Shown: positions 95-55,665 of the stretch, piece by piece
Numbering within the stretch: position 1 is the stretch's first letter
How the letters are laid out: every line of letters begins with the position of its first letter
Source of the DNA: Obrimoposthia wandeli
Lineage: Eukaryota
Assembly: GCA_977020255.1 (NCBI GenBank)
Contig: CDROCS010003176.1
Coordinates: 1 to 64,000, forward strand
Length of the DNA stretch: 64,000 nucleotides
Direction: 5' to 3'
Position numbers and translations under genes: made by a program
The notes under the pieces: model-generated
Databases searched by the model: none
What the model saw: only the letters and a program-made list of their open reading frames with translations
Told to the model about the DNA's origin: nothing

Positions 95-565
95 ATGACA
101 GCATTATTGAATAACCTACAATCGGTTACTGCTTCTCAGGCATATAAATCAACCTTTACAACAAACTCTACGTTATCTCAATACCAGTCGGTTAAATGCC
201 CTATTGATGTTTCATTTACAAATGAGTCGCAAACACAGCTCGCCTACTTTTTACGTTTATTAAAGCAAGCGAGCTTGCAGAGCCGTTGGATTATGTTCAT
301 TGGCGACGAAGCGATGATTGATAAAAAGCTTCTTATAAACGCAGGCATTGATATTAGTAAGGTGCTAGTCTTAAAAAACAAAAAGTTGTTAGATAACCAA
401 GCATTAATGACAAAGGCATTGATCAGCGGTAACTGTAGTGCCGTTATTGCGGCAGGCAATGTTACTAGTTTCCAAACAGACGCTATTCACCAAGCATCAG
501 AACAAGGTCAAACACTGGCATTTGTTATTAATCATGCTACAAAACATAAGGTTACACTGCATTAA
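95..565 (+). CDS. sulA: SOS cell-division inhibitor SulA
   Basis: 156 aa; LLRLLKQASLQSRWIMFI and KALISGNCSAV resemble the SulA core; LexA box upstream. Confidence 0.8.
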   Translation: MTALLNNLQSVTASQAYKSTFTTNSTLSQYQSVKCPIDVSFTNESQTQLAYFLRLLKQASLQSRWIMFIGDEAMIDKKLLINAGIDISKVLVLKNKKLLDNQALMTKALISGNCSAVIAAGNVTSFQTDAIHQASEQGQTLAFVINHATKHKVTLH

Positions 566-764
566 TTCACGATAGCGTTATATACAACTAATGGTATTGC
601 TGTTTAATCAAACGATCTGGTTAAATTTTTGATCTATAGCAACGAAAAGGGTTATCCACTGCTATTAAGTTAATGAATGTCACATAATTTCTGAAATTTC
701 TCAAAAAAGCACAATGAAATGCTTTATTATCTACGACCTATAGTTATTTACACCGGATTTTATT

Positions 765-2171
765 TTGGATAATAAACTTGGTTTAGGTGCGATGACCGCA
801 CTGGTAATAGGTTCTATGATTGGTGCGGGCGTTTTTAGCCTTCCCCAAAATATGGCCTCTGTGGCTAGCCCAGCAGCTGTAATGATTGGTTGGAGCATTA
901 CAGGTATAGGAATGATTTTTCTTGCCCTCGCTTTTCAACATCTTTCCCATTTAAAACCAGAAATTGAAAGTGGCGTTTTTGGTTACGCCCAAGCAGGTTT
1001 TGGTGACTTCGTAGGCTTCTGTTCTGCATGGGGCTATTGGCTAAGCGCAATGCTTGCCAACGTTTCTTATTTAGTGATCGTCTTCAGCACGCTAGGTATG
1101 TTTTTCGATCAACCTGATATGATTTTATTTGGCGAAGGAAATACCTGGCTTGCTGTTGCGGGCTCCTCCATTTTATTATGGCTTGTACACGCCTTAGTAC
1201 TGCGTGGTATTCAAACTGCTGCCATTATTAATATGGTAACAACCATCGCTAAACTTGTTCCCCTCTTTATGTTTATTGCTTTCGCCTTTGTAGCATTTAA
1301 GTGGGATACCTTTATTTTTGATTTTACTGGGCTTCATTTTGGTGAAGAGCATGATCTACTTTCTCAAGTAAAAAGCACCATGCTAATTACAGTCTGGGTA
1401 TTCATTGGTATTGAAGGCGCGGTGGTTGTTTCAAGCCGAGCAAGACACCGTAGAGATATTGGTAGAGCAACCATTCTTGGTCTATTAACCGCTTTATCTA
1501 TTTATGTACTTGTGACGCTGCTTTCTATGGGTGTTATTACCACTCAAGAGTTAGCGACTTATCACAACCCATCAATGGCACAAGTGCTCACGCATATCTT
1601 AGGCCCTTGGGGTGGGATTATTATTGGCTGTGGTTTGTTAATTTCGGTATGCGGAGCATTCTTAAGCTGGACTGTATTAGCCTCTGAAGCGCCCTATCTT
1701 GCTGCTAAAGATAAGATGTTTCCTAAGTGCTTTACCACTCAGAATAAAGCGGGAAGCCCTGTAAAATCCCTTTTATTAACTAACATCTGCATTCAAGTTT
1801 CATTGTTTTTTGTTATGTATGCAGGGGGAACGTATGACACCCTACTGGCCATCGCTTCTGAAATGATCTTAGTGCCTTATTTCTTAGTTGGTGCATATAC
1901 ATTGCAACTCGCAATCCAGACTAAAAATCGCGGTTCGCTGTTATTTGTTGGGATTTGTGCAAGTAGTTACGGCTTATGGCTTCTATATGCTTCGGGCTTA
2001 AATTATCTGCTACTTTCTGCATTACTTTACCTTCCCGGTTTGTATTTCTACGTAAAAGCTAAACGCGAACAAGGCGTAAAAGTCTTCGTGGGGAAAGAAA
2101 AAGCGGCGGCGGGTATACTCACCGTTGCTGCTTGTTTTGCAGTCGGCATGCTTTGGACGGGTATCTTATAA
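765..2171 (+). CDS. APC-family basic amino acid/polyamine antiporter (ArcD-like)
   Basis: GSMIGAGVFSLP and WVFIGIEGA motifs, about 12 hydrophobic segments, TTG start. Confidence 0.85.
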   Translation: MDNKLGLGAMTALVIGSMIGAGVFSLPQNMASVASPAAVMIGWSITGIGMIFLALAFQHLSHLKPEIESGVFGYAQAGFGDFVGFCSAWGYWLSAMLANVSYLVIVFSTLGMFFDQPDMILFGEGNTWLAVAGSSILLWLVHALVLRGIQTAAIINMVTTIAKLVPLFMFIAFAFVAFKWDTFIFDFTGLHFGEEHDLLSQVKSTMLITVWVFIGIEGAVVVSSRARHRRDIGRATILGLLTALSIYVLVTLLSMGVITTQELATYHNPSMAQVLTHILGPWGGIIIGCGLLISVCGAFLSWTVLASEAPYLAAKDKMFPKCFTTQNKAGSPVKSLLLTNICIQVSLFFVMYAGGTYDTLLAIASEMILVPYFLVGAYTLQLAIQTKNRGSLLFVGICASSYGLWLLYASGLNYLLLSALLYLPGLYFYVKAKREQGVKVFVGKEKAAAGILTVAACFAVGMLWTGIL

Positions 2172-8566: not shown

Positions 8567-9091
8567 ATGACACGTTTTACTCGTCATCAAATTTGGTTTC
8601 ACTGGCTTAGCCTACTGCTTATTGCTATTACCTATTCAGCCATTGAGCTGAAAGGCATTGTACCTAAAACAACCCCTTGGCATGACTACCTTAAAATCAT
8701 TCATTTCAATGCCGGTTGTTTTGTCTTGGTTTTGATGTGCATTCGGCTTTACTTTCAGCGCAATCAGGTAACACCCGAAATTATTCCCGCGCCTCCCCAA
8801 TGGCAATTAACCTTGTCAAAAGCGATACACTACATCATGTATGCAGCCTTTATTCTTTTACCTTTATTAGGGTTAATTATGCTGGCTGTAGGGGGGAAGC
8901 AATGGGATTTATTAGGCATACCCATGCCTGCTTTTTCAGTGCCTGATAAAGAAACATCAAAGTCGATTAAAGAAATTCACGAAACTATCGCCGACATTGG
9001 TTATTTTCTGATTGCGATACATGCAGGGGCTGCTATCTACCATCACTATGTGGTGAAAGACAATACGCTACAGCGAATGCTGCCTAAATAG
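8567..9091 (+). CDS. Cytochrome b561 (CybB/YodB family)
   Basis: Four TM segments with heme His ligands: FHWLS, IHFNAG, IHETIA, IHAGAAIYHH. Confidence 0.9.
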   Translation: MTRFTRHQIWFHWLSLLLIAITYSAIELKGIVPKTTPWHDYLKIIHFNAGCFVLVLMCIRLYFQRNQVTPEIIPAPPQWQLTLSKAIHYIMYAAFILLPLLGLIMLAVGGKQWDLLGIPMPAFSVPDKETSKSIKEIHETIADIGYFLIAIHAGAAIYHHYVVKDNTLQRMLPK

Positions 9092-9159: not shown

Positions 9160-10785
9160 TCAACTAGAGTGCTTATCGGCATCTCTTAACTGTTTAAACG
9201 CCACTTTACTTAAACTAAAAAGACGTTTAGCTTGATTGAGGTAATCGGTTTTATCCCCCTCAATTCTTCGACGATTAAGCTGCGTATTAACACCATCTTC
9301 ATACGCAAATTGTAACAGTACCCCTATTTCATCAAGGTTAAATGCCGCCTTATTTTCACTCACGCATACTGGAATAATATGATCAGGCGATAACAATTCT
9401 TGGTTATATTCAACGGCGGCTTTAATGGTGTTAGCTTTGGCTGTTGTCGGCTGCTCTATGTTGTAAGGTGGTTGCCATTCTTGCACAGGCTGAAGGCGAT
9501 CAACTTGATTAACCAATGCCAATATCTGCGGTTTTTTTCGTGATCGGTTTTTCGGTTGTGTATAAAAGTCATCAATAGCCGCTTTTAGATGAGTGTCTAA
9601 TGTTCTGGCTGATTGATTAGCTTTAAGTACCCACAAGACAAGATCACTGTTAGCAATCTGATCAACAATCAAGGCTTCTGTTTTAGGATTGCCATCAATA
9701 CCAGGAAGATCGACCAAATGGATCAGATCGACACCATCGACTTCGCATTTATGAACATGAATACTGTCGGTTGAAGGAATGGCACTGACTTCTGCAACCA
9801 TACTGCCAACCACGGCATTCACCACTGACGATTTACCCGCACTCACTTGCCCAATAACAGCAACACGCAACGGTTCAATATTGGGTTCGACTCGCGCATG
9901 ATCTTTAGTGACAACGTCACTCCCTGCGAGCTCTGCGTCTCTGGCTTTAAAACGACCACTGTATAAATCGATTGCCACAGAAACCACTTCTTGTAACAAC
10001 GACTTCTTCAGGCGATGCTGCACATCGGTGCTCACTTCATCAAAAAGTCGACCAACAATCTGACTTCTGGCTTCGGCAATCCAACCTGCGGGGGTAACGG
10101 CACGAAAGATACGATAGACGTCGTACGCTTTCTTCGCGGTGTCCATTTTGTCTTTGTGTGCATACCCTTGCTTGATAGTGGTTAGCTTTATCTTTTCTGA
10201 GAATGGGATATTTTCTTTAAGGAAGTGACGATAACGATGGCTAACCTCTTCGACCATCAATAAGAACTCTGGTGCTGTAAATGCTAAATCGTGGGCGGTA
10301 GCATTAGGCGCATATTCACGGGCAACGTGAGAGGCTAATTCAAAGCCATGCTCACGCAAACTGCCCCACTCATCATCAGTTTCTAATTTTTGTTGAATCG
10401 TCGTATTGAGCTTTTTCCACACTTGAAGATCAAATTCAGACCATTCTGCATTAGGTTCGACAGTGGCTTTCTCAAAGTCATCATCGGTTAGCGTATTCTG
10501 TTGTGTGCCGTTTCGTTTTTGGTTTTGGTTTTGCTTCGATGGGTCTTGTTCAGAAAAGCGCTGTTTTGCCGCCCTTTGTTTCAAGAAAAGAAACGGCAAA
10601 AAGATAACAAAACAAAACACGGCTGATAAGCCTAAAAATAGCAGCCATTGCCCTTTTTCAAATAATGACACCGCACCAAAAACAGCCAAAATAATGAAGG
10701 GAATGAATATCGCGGTAATCATTAAAGGGATAAAGCCATGAGATAAACGGCTCAATAATCGATAACTATTTTTAAGCTGCTTCAT
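9160..10785 (-). CDS. Membrane-anchored P-loop GTPase (N-terminal 2 TM, C-terminal G domain)
   Basis: G1 GQVSAGKS, G3 DLPG, G4 NQVD; two hydrophobic helices at the N-terminus. Confidence 0.8.
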   Translation of the reverse strand: MKQLKNSYRLLSRLSHGFIPLMITAIFIPFIILAVFGAVSLFEKGQWLLFLGLSAVFCFVIFLPFLFLKQRAAKQRFSEQDPSKQNQNQKRNGTQQNTLTDDDFEKATVEPNAEWSEFDLQVWKKLNTTIQQKLETDDEWGSLREHGFELASHVAREYAPNATAHDLAFTAPEFLLMVEEVSHRYRHFLKENIPFSEKIKLTTIKQGYAHKDKMDTAKKAYDVYRIFRAVTPAGWIAEARSQIVGRLFDEVSTDVQHRLKKSLLQEVVSVAIDLYSGRFKARDAELAGSDVVTKDHARVEPNIEPLRVAVIGQVSAGKSSVVNAVVGSMVAEVSAIPSTDSIHVHKCEVDGVDLIHLVDLPGIDGNPKTEALIVDQIANSDLVLWVLKANQSARTLDTHLKAAIDDFYTQPKNRSRKKPQILALVNQVDRLQPVQEWQPPYNIEQPTTAKANTIKAAVEYNQELLSPDHIIPVCVSENKAAFNLDEIGVLLQFAYEDGVNTQLNRRRIEGDKTDYLNQAKRLFSLSKVAFKQLRDADKHSS

Positions 10786-11984
10786 CGTTTATCCTGTTTG
10801 ATATTTTGTTTGATGCCTTGTTCTCTATTATTGGTATTCTGATTATGGCGCTTTTCTATTGTGTCGGTTTTATGCATCTCCGTTTCAGCAACATTTTTAA
10901 TGCTATCAAATGCTTGCTCAAAAACGGCTTTCATTTCTTCTTTCGTTACCGTTTCGCCTTTGCTCTTATGGTATAGGTATTTACATGCCGCACGACCAAT
11001 CGCGTATGTCGATGAAAAGCTCATTGCAGCTGCTGTTGCACTGCCTATCGTTTGACCATAAAACGGAATGAATTTCACCAACTGGCGAATCCCCAACTTC
11101 GAGAGATACTGCACCATAAAACCTGTGCCTAATGTGCCTATAAACTCAATAAAATCTTGTTTCGTCCATTCGATACCGTATTGATTGCCTAAACTGTGCA
11201 GCATTTTCCCTTGTATAGCGGGTACTGAGACAAAGCCTACCGCTGGAATAGCATCACTTGCACCAGCAGCGCCTGCGCACCACAGTACTTCGGTTTTCAG
11301 TTTATTGAAATTACCTTCTTCACGAGAAATATGTGCTTTGGTATTCGTGAATAAACTTAAAATAGGTAGCATATCTGCCAAGGTGGTTTTCAGCGTATCA
11401 AGCCCAATAACGTCACCCGTTTCTGGTGAGAAGTCGGCTTGAATGGACTGTACTGACCCACCCCACACATGTTCAACTTGGGTTTGATTGTGCAAAATCG
11501 CTTGTTGTTGCTCGGTATACGTTCCCAACGAACCAATAGCGGTGTGGACAATCAGAAGATGCTTTATATCACCTGATTTTTTAATCTGTTTAAGTGCATT
11601 CAGTACATCACTTTGTTCTGGCTCTTCTGCTTTTAGTACCACAATTAATGCATGGCTTCGATCTTTACAGGTTTGAATATCTTCATGAGGATCGTAATCA
11701 GATTCAGAGAGGCCACGCGTATCAAGAAAACATAATAATGGGTTTTCAGCAGGATAATGATAGCTATGTGCCGTTTGGGTACAAGGTTGAAAACCATTAC
11801 CAACTTCAACAGCAGAGTTACCCGTTAAGGCTTGAATTAACGTCGATTTACCCGCGCCTGTTTTACCTAACAACCACAATGTAGGTAAATGCTGCTGCCA
11901 TTGTGTGAACGCAGGTTCGATATCAGGGTTCACTGACGGATTCATGTAACTAAACACTTTCTTGAAAAAGCTATTCATTGCCAT
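10782..11984 (-). CDS. GTPase fused to DUF697/YcjF-like C-terminal domain
   Basis: G1 GKTGAGKS, G2 PCT, G3 DTRG; C-terminal AAGASDAIPAVGFVSVPAIQGKML..IPFYGQTIG..TYAIG pattern. Confidence 0.75.
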   Translation of the reverse strand: MAMNSFFKKVFSYMNPSVNPDIEPAFTQWQQHLPTLWLLGKTGAGKSTLIQALTGNSAVEVGNGFQPCTQTAHSYHYPAENPLLCFLDTRGLSESDYDPHEDIQTCKDRSHALIVVLKAEEPEQSDVLNALKQIKKSGDIKHLLIVHTAIGSLGTYTEQQQAILHNQTQVEHVWGGSVQSIQADFSPETGDVIGLDTLKTTLADMLPILSLFTNTKAHISREEGNFNKLKTEVLWCAGAAGASDAIPAVGFVSVPAIQGKMLHSLGNQYGIEWTKQDFIEFIGTLGTGFMVQYLSKLGIRQLVKFIPFYGQTIGSATAAAMSFSSTYAIGRAACKYLYHKSKGETVTKEEMKAVFEQAFDSIKNVAETEMHKTDTIEKRHNQNTNNREQGIKQNIKQDKR

Positions 11985-12016
11985 ACGTGATTCTTATTCT
12001 CTACTTACGTGATGCA

Positions 12017-12055
12017 TATACCCAAGTTACCTTAAGATGCTCGTTTCAGCGAGAA
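12017..12055 (+). repeat. MITE/ERIC-like repeat family 1, terminal copy
   Basis: TATACCCAAGTTACCTTAAGATGC; the same terminus recurs at 32440, 52914, 55597 and 57392. Confidence 0.75.
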
Positions 12056-12139
12056 TTTGTTGGGATCTTGGCAAGATGCTGATATATAAACCCTGTGTGT
12101 CTTTATTCTCTTTATTCAATACCTTTACAAGGCCGTTGC

Positions 12140-12175
12140 AAAAAAGGCTAAAGCACCATAGATGCTTTAGCCTTT
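12140..12175 (-). terminator. Intrinsic terminator of the efflux/channel operon
   Basis: A-tract plus GGCTAAAGCA..TGCTTTAGCC 10-bp stem. Confidence 0.8.
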
Positions 12176-12226: not shown

Positions 12227-13348
12227 TTAATCTTTCGCCTCAACCAGATCTTCTTTAGCCGCTTCTAATGGGGTTTCATCTTGATCTAACTTCAACCAAG
12301 TCACGAATAGTTCATACCAAATAGCCAGTACAACCGCGCCAAGGAATAAACCAATAATACCTGCCGCCAACATACCACCGATAGCACCAATCAAAATAAC
12401 AGGCATAGGTACATCAACCCCACGCCCCATTAGCATTGGTTTTAAGAAATTATCAGATATACCCGCGAGCAGTACCCAAACCGTGAAGATAGTTGCCGGT
12501 GTGGTGTCTTGTGTCGAGAATACATAAAAGATAACGGGGGCTACAATAATAAGCGCTGGAAGCTGAGCAATACCCAAAATCAACACGCCGAGTGTAATTA
12601 AGCCCGCAGCGGGTACACCGAATACGAACATTCCTGCGCCCACCAGCATTGACTGAATAAAGGCAACGCCAACAACACCGAGTAATACACTACGAATGGT
12701 AGCTGCTGTCAGTGTTGTCCACTCTTCACCGTGTTTTCCTACAACACGGACAGCTAACGTACCGATGGCTTCAGAACACGCTTTAGAGTGCGTCATGAAA
12801 CCCGCAGCAATCGCCAATGAAATAATAAACATCACTAAGGTTGCTAAACTACTGCCCACTAAAGATGCCATTGTGCCGACTGCGCTTTTAATTTCAGGCA
12901 GGAAGTGCGTGACGGCTTTTTCTAAATTCGTCGAAAATAAAGACCACACTTCAAACAACTTATCACCAATAACGGGAATATCAGCAATGCGTTGTGTGGG
13001 GCCTGGGATTTTAATTTCGCCGCTTTGTACTACGTCAGTTAAATGGGTTACTGCATCAAAAATAGACCCTGACACCAAAACAAAAGGGGCAACTAACAAT
13101 GTAATACCCAGTAATGCCAATATTGTTGCCGACAAACCACGTCGACCGCCTAGCATATTTTCCAGTTTTTGAGTTAACGGTAATAGCGCAACGGCAATAA
13201 TTGCACCCCATAACACGGGGATAACGAACGGCTTAATAATGTCATACGTCCACGCAATTAGGATAAACAACAATCCAATTCGAATGGCAGATTCCACCAT
13301 ATTATTGACAAATATTTTACTCTGCTTAACGTCTATTTGTTTATCCAT
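12227..13348 (-). CDS. AI-2E family transporter
   Basis: Multi-TM; DNFLKPMLMGR..MPVILIGAIGG..GIIGLFLG motif. Confidence 0.9.
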   Translation of the reverse strand: MDKQIDVKQSKIFVNNMVESAIRIGLLFILIAWTYDIIKPFVIPVLWGAIIAVALLPLTQKLENMLGGRRGLSATILALLGITLLVAPFVLVSGSIFDAVTHLTDVVQSGEIKIPGPTQRIADIPVIGDKLFEVWSLFSTNLEKAVTHFLPEIKSAVGTMASLVGSSLATLVMFIISLAIAAGFMTHSKACSEAIGTLAVRVVGKHGEEWTTLTAATIRSVLLGVVGVAFIQSMLVGAGMFVFGVPAAGLITLGVLILGIAQLPALIIVAPVIFYVFSTQDTTPATIFTVWVLLAGISDNFLKPMLMGRGVDVPMPVILIGAIGGMLAAGIIGLFLGAVVLAIWYELFVTWLKLDQDETPLEAAKEDLVEAKD

Positions 13349-32439: not shown

Positions 32440-32497
32440 TATACCTCACGACCTCAATATACAGTATTCAGAGTGATCTTGAGGTAACTTGGTACAC
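32440..32497. repeat. Repeat family 1, short copy with both degenerate termini
   Basis: TATACCTCACGACCTCAATAT ... ATCTTGAGGTAACTTGGTAC. Confidence 0.65.
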
Positions 32498-52913: not shown

Positions 52914-52937
52914 TATACCCAAGCTACCTTAAGATGC
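52914..52937 (+). repeat. Repeat family 1, terminal copy
   Basis: TATACCCAAGCTACCTTAAGATGC, 23/24 identical to 12017-12040. Confidence 0.75.
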
Positions 52938-53313
52938 TGAATCACTCTCGAAGGGGGATTTTTGTTAGGGTATATATGGTAATAAATAGACCAGCATTCT
53001 ATTTATTCACGACAGCGAATGCCTTACTAGCAATGCATAGCTAAATGCGTTACATTTTATTTGTTATTCTCATCCCAGTTTTGATAGAAAGCATTTTTAT
53101 TTTGTCGAGCGCTAGCATTAAGCACTTAACTAGCTGTATTAATTAATAAATAAATTCAAATTTATAAAGCTTTTTATATAATGCACTGCTTTCTGCCCCC
53201 TTCCTCATCTAACTGACAGACACAATACACCCATAAATATAAAACCGTTAAATAACAGAATCATAATTTTAATTTATGCTAAATATTAGGTCACAACGAT
53301 AGAATTTAAAGAC

Positions 53314-55596: not shown

Positions 55597-55665
55597 ATAC
55601 CCAAGCTACCTCAAGATACAGGATTCAGAATGTTCTCAGCGAGCATCTGGAGGCAACTTGGGTAT
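55597..55665. mobile_element. Repeat family 1, complete 69-bp MITE-like copy
   Basis: ATACCCAAGCTACCTCAAGAT ... ATCTGGAGGCAACTTGGGTAT imperfect terminal inverted repeats. Confidence 0.8.

What the first reader, a model, noticed from the sequence alone, without database searches (positions are those of the whole stretch)
9160..11984. Translationally coupled pair of uncharacterised membrane-associated GTPases
Seen: two co-oriented genes overlapping by ATGA (10782-10785) with mirror architectures. One has an N-terminal G domain plus a hydrophobic DUF697/YcjF-like tail and a degenerate G4 (HTAIG). The other has two N-terminal TM helices, a long helical middle and a C-terminal G domain with intact G4 (NQVD). 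A MITE end sits 33 bp upstream, and the cassette lies convergent to cybB, consistent with an accessory insertion. Established: paired GTPases occur in bacterial dynamin-like systems (DLP1/DLP2, LeoABC), and YcjF partners the YcjX NTPase. Inference: a heterodimeric membrane remodelling, repair or anti-phage module that has not been characterised.
Basis: partly seen in the sequence, partly recalled or inferred. Interest (0 to 1): 0.7.

Follow-up and report, generated by a model that had tools for sequence, protein, structure and literature searches.

The report
Conserved paired membrane GTPase operon
Two overlapping genes in this Photobacterium contig encode a pair of related membrane-associated GTPases that always occur together, in the same order, in scattered and mostly marine bacteria; nothing I could search says what they do, and a cytoplasmic-membrane role fits the context better than phage defence.

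Summary
Both genes lie on the minus strand and overlap by ATGA.

- **Gene A** (10782-11984, 400 aa) has an N-terminal G domain and a DUF697-like helical tail.
- **Gene B** (9160-10785, 541 aa) has two strong N-terminal transmembrane helices, a conserved helical middle and a C-terminal G domain.
- **G4 motif:** A lacks the guanine-specificity Asp in all 53 relatives checked. B keeps it in 52 of 53.
- **Linkage:** B lies directly downstream of A in all 61 relatives' loci with enough flank to judge, from Pseudomonadota (three classes), Thermodesulfobacteriota, Campylobacterota and Planctomycetota. The same 90 of 201 Vibrionaceae species genomes carry both genes.
- **Relatedness:** the two G domains are homologous to each other, and the two families' divergences track (Mantel r=0.89).

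"Accessory insertion" is not supported here. The 76-bp repeat upstream is real but incidental, and hlyD-channel-perM-A-B synteny is kept in other Photobacterium species. More widely the pair is patchy (5 of 300 sampled Gammaproteobacteria) and has been transferred horizontally.

I found no third conserved gene, no defence, psp or mobile-element neighbours, no phage copies, and no literature.

The pair fails membership tests for LeoA/Eleos, Era/Der, IRG and YcjX. Its DUF697 link is weak.

The likeliest reading is a heteromeric, asymmetric membrane GTPase complex. That function is inferred, not shown.

The parts
10782..11984 (-). Gene A: 400-aa GTPase with an N-terminal G domain and a DUF697-like C-terminal helical domain. 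The true start may be the second ATG at 11978.
   Evidence: ORF. Pfam MMR_HSR1 38 bits, AIG1 27.1, DUF697 24.5. More than 1500 homologues. AF2 pLDDT 75.5, pTM 0.72.
11355..11888 (-). A's G domain (residues about 33-210). G1 GKTGAGKS, T69 and DTRG are intact; the G4 position is HTAI, with no NKxD.
   Evidence: Alignment A1. Motif counts over 53 relatives. VIA Z 12.5-16 to G domains. Best PDB profile hits are IRG proteins, E=3e-8.
10896..11324 (-). A's DUF697-like helical domain (residues about 221-363). It is rich in Gly/Ala/Ser and only moderately hydrophobic.
   Evidence: Pfam DUF697 matches residues 246-363, E=2.5e-5, below cut-off; 13 of 20 relatives match. Hydropathy maximum 1.37. Helices in the AF2 model.
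10782..10785 (-). ATGA stop/start overlap of A and B, indicating translational coupling.
   Evidence: Sequence. Overlapping junctions in 53 of 55 relatives' loci with both ORFs called; the overlap is 4-26 nt where B's start is reliable.
10792..10795 (-). AGGA Shine-Dalgarno-like site, 6 nt before B's ATG and inside the 3' end of A.
   Evidence: Sequence read directly. Its function is inferred.
9160..10785 (-). Gene B: 541-aa GTPase with an N-terminal transmembrane hairpin, a helical middle and a C-terminal G domain.
   Evidence: ORF. Pfam Dynamin_N 50.8 and MMR_HSR1 49.1 bits. More than 900 homologues. AF2 pLDDT 65.
10582..10737 (-). B's two transmembrane helices (residues about 17-68), joined by a 2-4 residue loop. 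Both ends are predicted to be cytoplasmic.
   Evidence: Kyte-Doolittle 2.7 in this protein and family-wide. The topology is inferred from the flanking basic residues.
9886..10473 (-). B's family-specific helical domain (residues about 105-300). It matches no Pfam family.
   Evidence: Invariant W115, W123, W140, E179/E180, R184/Y185, LYSGRF. No Pfam hit. ESM Atlas search returns only unnamed clusters.
9346..9879 (-). B's G domain (residues about 303-480): GQVSAGKS, T339, DLPG, NQVD.
   Evidence: Homologous to A's G domain over 160 columns (hhalign P 88%, E=2.8e-6). Best PDB profile hits are Der/EngA at 2e-11 and LeoA at 7e-6.
9166..9336 (-). B's C-terminal helices, carrying the nearly invariant QLNRRR motif (residues 502-507).
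   Evidence: Q 48/53, N 46/53, R505 51/53, R507 43/53. Its role is unknown.
12017..12092 (.). Dispersed MITE/REP-like repeat of about 76 bp, between the perM terminator and gene A, ending 33 bp before A's ATG.
   Evidence: At least 40 copies at 83-98% identity on many contigs of the assembly. Contig depth about 1600 against about 13, with loose ends at 12016/12017.
12143..12175 (.). 13-bp-stem hairpin with a T run. It is the likely terminator of the upstream perM-like gene, so A-B would need its own promoter in 11985-12142.
   Evidence: and the sequence. No consensus sigma-70 site was found on the minus strand.

Best explanation
A and B are the two subunits of one membrane-bound GTPase machine, made in fixed proportion from an overlapping two-gene operon.

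B is anchored in the cytoplasmic membrane by an N-terminal helical hairpin. Its helical domain and a canonical guanine-specific G domain face the cytoplasm. A is a paralogous G domain fused to a DUF697-like helical domain. It joins B at the membrane, most likely by nucleotide-dependent pairing of the two G domains across their nucleotide sites. That is how Toc33/159, GIMAP, IRG, septin and dynamin-like GTPases work.

The pair is asymmetric. A keeps its P-loop, switch-I Thr and DxxG but has lost the G4 Asp in every relative checked. It probably has relaxed or altered base specificity and acts as the regulatory or differently timed partner.

The likely job is upkeep or remodelling of the cytoplasmic membrane under stress, in the same functional neighbourhood as YcjX-YcjF and bacterial dynamin pairs. 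It is an optional, horizontally spread trait found mainly in marine bacteria.

Shown: the gene pair, the domains and motifs, strict co-occurrence, G-domain paralogy and the lack of defence context. Inferred: complex formation, membrane association of A, and the cellular role.
For: Linkage:
- B follows A on the same strand in all 61 relatives' loci with enough flank to judge, from four phyla, including three classes of Pseudomonadota.
- Stop and start overlap in 53 of 55 loci with both ORFs called.
- The same 90 of 201 Vibrionaceae genomes hold A and B, adjacent in each.
- No other conserved neighbour.
- A and B divergences track each other: Mantel r=0.89, 0 of 2000 permutations as high.

Paralogy and asymmetry:
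- The G domains align over 160 columns, including a shared YNQ helix after G4.
- A's G1/G2/G3 are kept in 53 of 53 relatives but no G4 Asp is present; B's G4 Asp is kept in 52 of 53.

Membrane link:
- B has two transmembrane helices, KD 2.7 family-wide.
- A's tail matches DUF697, the domain of the inner-membrane protein YcjF, in 13 of 20 relatives.

Fold class:
- A's nearest solved relatives are G-dimerising membrane GTPases: IRG proteins (E=3e-8 by profile; Foldseek about 1e-7), then EHD, LeoA, DLP1/2, BDLP, Toc33 and GIMAP.
- More distant G+DUF697 relatives also come as tandem pairs (L004 and L073; Septin and AIG1 Pfam hits).

Expression: fragments of both genes occur in two marine-sediment metatranscriptome assemblies. 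This is weak evidence.
Against: - There is no experimental or predicted-complex evidence for an A-B interface; no multimer predictor was available.
- A's tail is not clearly membrane-spanning (KD maximum 1.37). Its DUF697 score is below Pfam's cut-off, and E. coli YcjF itself gives no significant profile match.
- B's model is poor outside the G domain (pLDDT 65, pTM 0.42), and its structural matches are generic G domains.
- No stress-type promoter is conserved upstream, and there is no psp linkage.
- A is split in two pieces in P. profundum SS9 and in one other genome, so it is dispensable at least there.
Confidence: 0.55

Rival explanations
1. The pair is an anti-phage defence module of the Eleos (LeoA/LeoBC) type. 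Two membrane GTPases would sense or block infection at the membrane.
For: - Weak PADLOC hits: A to LeoBC at 2e-11, B to LeoA at 4e-13.
- Patchy distribution (90 of 201 Vibrionaceae; 5 of 300 sampled Gammaproteobacteria) and clear horizontal transfer across phyla.
- The nearest solved relatives of A include the eukaryotic immune GTPases IRG and GIMAP.
- A structurally similar ESM Atlas cluster is fused to TerB.
Against: - The PADLOC hits cover only about 80-130 G-domain residues of 560-600-position models. The NCBIfam LeoA family scores 32.8 against a cut-off of 325.
- Neighbours in ten distant loci are metabolic or envelope genes, with no defence or mobile genes, and there is no conserved third gene.
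- The site is syntenic within Photobacterium.
- No phage copies; the only plasmid hits are Vibrio replicons of 0.9-1.7 Mb.
- A is 55-59% identical between phyla, which is unusually conserved for a defence gene.
Confidence: 0.15
2. The pair is a GTPase gate or receptor for a membrane process such as protein insertion, translocation or transport. The model would be Toc33/Toc159 or SRP/FtsY, where two related GTPases activate each other to time a hand-over.
For: - Paralogous G domains in a strict pair.
- Toc33 is among the better structural and profile matches for both proteins.
- The membrane anchor in B.
Against: - No transporter, translocon or cargo gene is linked.
- The Toc matches are no better than those of many other G domains.
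Confidence: 0.1
3. The proteins are ribosome-associated or assembly GTPases, as the database label '50S ribosome-binding GTPase' implies.
For: Pfam MMR_HSR1 hits for both proteins. B's best PDB profile hits are Der/EngA and TrmE G domains.
Against: - Era, Der, HflX, YsxC and MnmE NCBIfam scores are 16-40 bits against cut-offs of 116-630.
- B has two transmembrane helices.
- Neither protein has a KH or other RNA-binding domain.
- The pair is missing from most sampled Gammaproteobacteria.
Confidence: 0.03

Closest known systems
YcjX-YcjF of E. coli (DUF463 NTPase plus DUF697 inner-membrane protein; adjacent to psp genes in some genomes, PMC3041696)
   Same: Both are two-gene units that combine a P-loop NTPase with a DUF697-type domain at the cytoplasmic membrane, and both are uncharacterised. 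A's tail matches Pfam DUF697 in 13 of 20 relatives.
   Different: - Here the NTPase is fused to the DUF697-like domain, and the transmembrane hairpin sits on a second GTPase.
- B shares only the P-loop with YcjX.
- E. coli YcjF gives no significant profile match to A or B.
- There is no psp linkage.
Bacterial dynamin-like pairs: DLP1/DLP2 of Campylobacter jejuni (PDB 5oxf/5owv), LeoABC/Eleos, BDLP
   Same: These are also operon-encoded pairs of related membrane-associated GTPases expected to pair through their G domains. B passes Pfam Dynamin_N (50.8 bits against 27). LeoA, DLP1/2 and BDLP appear among A's Foldseek hits.
   Different: - The G domains here are Ras-sized (about 175 aa), not the dynamin size of about 300 aa.
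- There is no stalk or paddle following the G domain.
- B's membrane anchor is an N-terminal transmembrane hairpin.
- The NCBIfam LeoA family scores 32.8 against 325.
- TM-scores are 0.29-0.35, and B's structural hits are generic G domains.
Septin-like ('paraseptin') GTPases: IRG/p47 (Irga6, Irgb10), GIMAP/AIG1, Toc33/159
   Same: - These give A's best sequence-profile hits in the PDB (Irgb10 E=3e-8; also GIMAP7 and Toc33).
- Pfam AIG1 matches 17 of 20 A relatives, and IIGP matches 10 of 20 B relatives.
- A has the same order as an IRG: N-terminal helix, G domain, C-terminal helical domain, about 400 aa.
- These families act on membranes as G-domain dimers.
   Different: - Whole-chain TM-scores to IRGs are only 0.33-0.38, and IRGs are not in the top 50 by VIA Z.
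- Pfam IIGP scores 15.6 against a cut-off of 24 for A.
- A lacks the G4 motif that IRG, GIMAP and Toc proteins keep.
- The partner protein B has no counterpart in those systems.

Membership tests
DUF697 / YcjF family (Pfam PF05128) | Score at or above Pfam's gathering cut-off for DUF697 | tested here: inconclusive
   The window protein scores 24.5 bits against a cut-off of 27.7 (E=2.5e-5, residues 246-363). Thirteen of 20 family members match at E<=1e-3, best 5.6e-7.
DUF697 / YcjF family (Pfam PF05128) | Detectable similarity to E. coli YcjF itself, and a YcjX (DUF463) partner | tested here: not met
   hhalign of A1 against YcjF gives a 20-column match at E=0.25. A2 against YcjF gives E=0.29. 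A2 against YcjX matches the P-loop only, P 5%.
LeoA/HP0731 dynamin-like GTPases and the Eleos defence system | Full-length match to the LeoA or LeoBC models | tested here: not met
   NCBIfam NF041922 scores 32.8 bits against a cut-off of 325. PADLOC LeoA and LeoBC hits cover only residues 303-431 of B and 37-118 of A.
LeoA/HP0731 dynamin-like GTPases and the Eleos defence system | Location among defence or mobile genes | tested here: not met
   No conserved neighbour. Twenty neighbours in ten loci are non-defence genes. No phage hits, and the only plasmid hits are large Vibrio replicons.
Dynamin superfamily (Pfam Dynamin_N plus stalk) | Dynamin_N domain above cut-off | tested here: met
   B scores 50.8 bits against 27, and all 20 relatives match. 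A scores 20.8, below cut-off. MMR_HSR1 scores about the same as Dynamin_N for B.
Dynamin superfamily (Pfam Dynamin_N plus stalk) | Enlarged G domain with a helical stalk or bundle built around it, and structural similarity to solved dynamin-like proteins | tested here: not met
   B's G domain is about 175 aa, followed by only about 60 aa. B's Foldseek hits are Nog1, GIMAP5, Arl, Era and G-alpha, with dynamin-family hits limited to EHD2 at rank 43. For A, TM-scores to BDLP, DLP1/2 and LeoA are 0.29-0.35.
Era/Der/HflX/YsxC-type ribosome GTPases | NCBIfam equivalog score above cut-off | tested here: not met
   Era 40.2 against 116; Der 33.9 against 307; HflX 16.1 against 217; YsxC 25.9 against 124; MnmE 30.5 against 253.
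IRG / IIGP (Pfam PF05049) | IIGP domain above cut-off and the whole-chain IRG fold | tested here: not met
   A scores 15.6 bits against 24 and B 13.4. Foldseek TM-scores are 0.33-0.38 with rmsd 16-19 A. IRGs are the best PDB profile hit only over the G domain and its edge.
Canonical guanine-specific GTPase | G4 [NT]KxD with the specificity Asp | tested here: not met
   This verdict is for A: it has [H/Q][T/S]xx with no Asp in 53 of 53 relatives. B does meet the feature, with [N/T/S][Q/H]xD and the Asp in 52 of 53.

The most novel reading that the evidence does not exclude
The pair defines an undescribed class of bacterial membrane machine: an obligate, asymmetric heterodimer of septin-like GTPases related to the stock from which eukaryotic IRG/GIMAP/Toc membrane GTPases arose. 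A G4-less subunit, possibly ATP-using or non-selective, would control a canonical GTPase anchored by a transmembrane hairpin. The DUF697 domain would be the membrane-acting element, which would also give the first handle on what YcjF-type proteins do.
Probability: 0.2. Interest if true: 0.7.

Novelty: new variant of a known kind. Interest (0 to 1): 0.45.

Why it matters
DUF697/YcjF proteins and many bacterial membrane GTPases are widespread, yet their function is unknown. This pair is a compact system for study:

- It has two genes, strict co-inheritance and no other required partner.
- One nucleotide site is visibly altered and the other is canonical.
- The species that carry it are culturable (Photobacterium, Vibrio splendidus group, Pseudomonas).

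Working out its function would show how small septin-like GTPases act on bacterial membranes. It could also clarify the bacterial roots of the eukaryotic IRG/GIMAP/Toc GTPases. If the pair turned out to be a defence system instead, it would be an unusual one: conserved in sequence and not located in defence islands.

Tried and rejected
- **Literature.** Searches for DUF697, PBPRA1570/PBPRA1571 and COG3596 found nothing on this pair. Searches for YcjF/YcjX, paraseptin, and IRG/GIMAP bacterial homologues gave only background.
- **YcjF and YcjX comparisons.** Profiles of A and B against E. coli YcjF and YcjX showed no significant similarity beyond the P-loop.
- **Promoter scan.** I scanned 57 upstream regions for sigma-E, sigma-32 and sigma-54 type promoters. 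Sigma-32-like hits were 8 against 2.7 in shuffles but at inconsistent positions, so I did not count them as evidence. No consensus sigma-70 site lies upstream of A on the minus strand.
- **B's middle domain.** It has no Pfam family, and the ESM Atlas search returned only unnamed clusters scoring below 0.9.
- **B's tree.** It did not finish in the time allowed. I used the Mantel test as the co-evolution measure instead.
- **Relatives search.** The genome search 'relatives' is not available for this assembly. I used the genome of a fetched Photobacterium locus as the centre instead.
- **Large representative-protein search.** The family has plenty of relatives and no claim here rests on their absence.
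- **'Accessory insertion by MITE'.** Considered and rejected on synteny.
Full report
**What is there**

Two minus-strand ORFs fill the interval: gene A at 10782-11984 (400 aa) and gene B at 9160-10785 (541 aa). A's TGA stop (10784-10782) overlaps B's ATG (10785-10783), giving ATGA. An AGGA lies 6 nt before B's ATG.

Upstream of A are a dispersed repeat at 12017-12092 and a hairpin with a T run at 12143-12175. The hairpin probably terminates the AI-2E/PerM-type gene at 12227-13348. Downstream, a cytochrome b561 gene (8567-9091, plus strand) converges on B.

**Domains and motifs**

- **Gene A.** Pfam gives only generic G-domain hits (MMR_HSR1, AIG1) and a sub-threshold DUF697 hit at 24.5 bits against 27.7. 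Thirteen of 20 aligned relatives match DUF697 at E<=1e-3.
- **Gene B.** It passes Dynamin_N (50.8 bits) and MMR_HSR1 (49.1 bits). Residues 100-300 match nothing.
- **NCBIfam.** No equivalog comes near its cut-off, so neither protein is Era, Der, HflX, YsxC, MnmE, HydF or a LeoA-family protein.
- **Nucleotide motifs over 53 paired relatives.** A keeps G1, the switch-I Thr and DTRG in all of them, but its G4 position is [H/Q][T/S]xx with no Asp. B has [N/T/S][Q/H]xD with the Asp in 52 of 53.
- **Hydropathy.** B's residues 17-68 form two strongly hydrophobic helices joined by a very short loop. A's tail reaches only 1.37 on the Kyte-Doolittle scale, so its membrane insertion is not established.
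- **B's C-terminus** carries a nearly invariant QLNRRR motif.

**Are the two proteins a unit?**

A genome-collection scan with the A alignment returned 61 loci that carry a true A relative, excluding two short contig fragments from one Bosea genome. They come from Gamma-, Alpha- and Zetaproteobacteria, Thermodesulfobacteriota, Campylobacterota and Planctomycetota. In each of the 61, a B relative starts right at the end of A on the same strand.

In the 55 loci where both ORFs were called, 53 junctions overlap. The overlap is 4-26 nt wherever B's start is reliable.

Clustering all flanking ORFs found no third conserved gene. The next "families" are antisense shadows of A and B.

In 201 Vibrionaceae species genomes, A was found in 90 and B in the same 90, adjacent each time.

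Pairwise distances of A and B correlate at r=0.89, with 0 of 2000 permutations as high.

The two G domains are homologous to each other over 160 columns, including a shared helix with a YNQ motif after G4 (hhalign P 88%, E=2.8e-6). The pair is therefore an old duplication that has stayed together.

**Distribution and mobility**

The organism belongs to the Photobacterium profundum / frigidiphilum / indicum group: 98% identity for A and 94% for B. The P. profundum SS9 genes are PBPRA1570 and PBPRA1571.

The order hlyD, K channel, perM, A, B is kept in P. chitinilyticum and P. sanctipauli. This argues against a recent insertion at this site.

At larger scale the pair is sporadic. It was found in 5 of 300 evenly drawn Gammaproteobacteria.

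The A tree shows horizontal transfer:
- Vibrionaceae copies fall in three separate clades.
- Planctomycetota, Desulfotignum and Sulfurovum copies nest among gammaproteobacterial ones.

There are no phage copies. The five plasmid hits are all non-mobilisable Vibrio replicons of 0.9-1.7 Mb. Immediate neighbours in ten distant loci are PPK2, an L,D-transpeptidase, a lytic transglycosylase, a CAAX protease, XdhC, regulators, cytochrome bd, MsrA, tryptophanase and the like. None is a defence, psp or mobile-element gene.

**Structure**

- **A's model** is usable (pLDDT 75.5, pTM 0.72): an N-terminal helix, a G domain and six C-terminal helices.
  - Foldseek ranks the IRG proteins first (E about 1e-7, TM only 0.33-0.38), then EHD, LeoA, DLP1/2, BDLP, mitofusin and GIMAP7.
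  - The exhaustive VIA search gives generic G domains at Z 12.5-16, with Toc33 and EHD4 extending into the tail.
  - By sequence profile, the best solved relatives are again IRG proteins (3e-8), then GIMAP and Toc33.
- **B's model** is weak outside the G domain (pLDDT 65). Its hits are generic.
- **ESM Atlas.** It shows a wide superfamily of G-domain plus DUF697 proteins in Pseudomonadota, Cyanobacteriota, Bacillota and Myxococcota. One cluster is fused to TerB.
- **Pairing recurs.** More distant members also occur as tandem pairs, and one such pair on another contig of this assembly passes Pfam Septin.

**Reading**

The shown facts fit a two-subunit, membrane-anchored GTPase complex with one canonical and one G4-less nucleotide site. 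By analogy with the septin-like and dynamin-like families that are its nearest relatives, the G domains probably pair across their nucleotide sites.

The cellular role is not shown. A cytoplasmic-membrane maintenance or remodelling function is the best guess (0.55). Phage defence (0.15), a Toc- or SRP-like gating role (0.1) and a ribosome role (0.03) are the rivals.

I found no paper on the pair. Database names such as 'YcjF family protein', 'kinase', 'dynamin family protein' and '50S ribosome-binding GTPase' are automatic labels. The membership tests here do not bear them out, apart from a weak DUF697 link and a Dynamin_N hit for B.

**Expression**

Short contigs from two marine-sediment metatranscriptome runs cover parts of both genes at 90-99% identity. 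Contigs cannot show a transcript spanning both genes, and DNA carry-over is possible, so this is weak support.

**Limits**

- No multimer prediction was available, no experiments exist, and the large representative-protein search was not run.
- B's tree did not finish.
- Genome tallies are samples: where the pair is missing, read "not found in those searched", not "absent".

Noticed in passing
window 12017-12092: A dispersed repeat of about 76 bp (MITE/REP-like). It has at least 40 copies at 83-98% identity on many contigs of the assembly, and contig depth is about 120 times that of the flanks in two runs. Shorter matches to its first 25 bp lie at 52914-52938, 55597-55617, 55640-55665 and 32476-32492 in the window.
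   Followed up: partly
G000 as a whole; L002 (C410:354436-355530) and L003 (C3952:160453-161547): The assembly holding the window has 1.35 Gb in 6912 contigs and carries further complete A-B pairs at about 60% (A) and 38% (B) identity on other contigs. It therefore mixes several bacteria (a host plus microbes, or a metagenome-like assembly), and the window's contig is one Photobacterium among them.
   Followed up: partly
L004 (G000:C1802:1121392-1125480), ORFs 1492-2592 and 407-1480, minus strand: Two tandem paralogous GTPases of 366 and 357 aa that pass Pfam Septin (36 bits against 26.2) and hit AIG1. They are 28% identical to gene A over its full length. This is a second, more distant paired septin-like GTPase locus in the same assembly.
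   Followed up: partly
relatives of gene A: G107:C1:1786883-1788071 and G139:C51:15257-16417: Gene A is split into two pieces in two Vibrionaceae genomes. G107 is 93% identical to the window's A and may be P. profundum SS9, where A is annotated as the 314-aa PBPRA1570. B is intact in both genomes. This is either real decay or a sequencing error.
   Followed up: no
window 10473-10580 (B residues about 70-105) and 10785-10860 (A residues about 375-400): Asn/Gln/Lys-rich low-complexity stretches that are absent from relatives outside the P. profundum group. Three of the four runs laid on the stretch (two metatranscriptomes and an ice metagenome) have contigs with a 6-nt deletion at 10517, inside B's linker.
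   Followed up: no
ESM Atlas cluster, row 2: A cluster of 639-aa proteins has a fold like gene A (TM 0.63 by query) fused to a TerB domain. This links the G-domain family to TerB-type membrane stress or defence modules.
   Followed up: no
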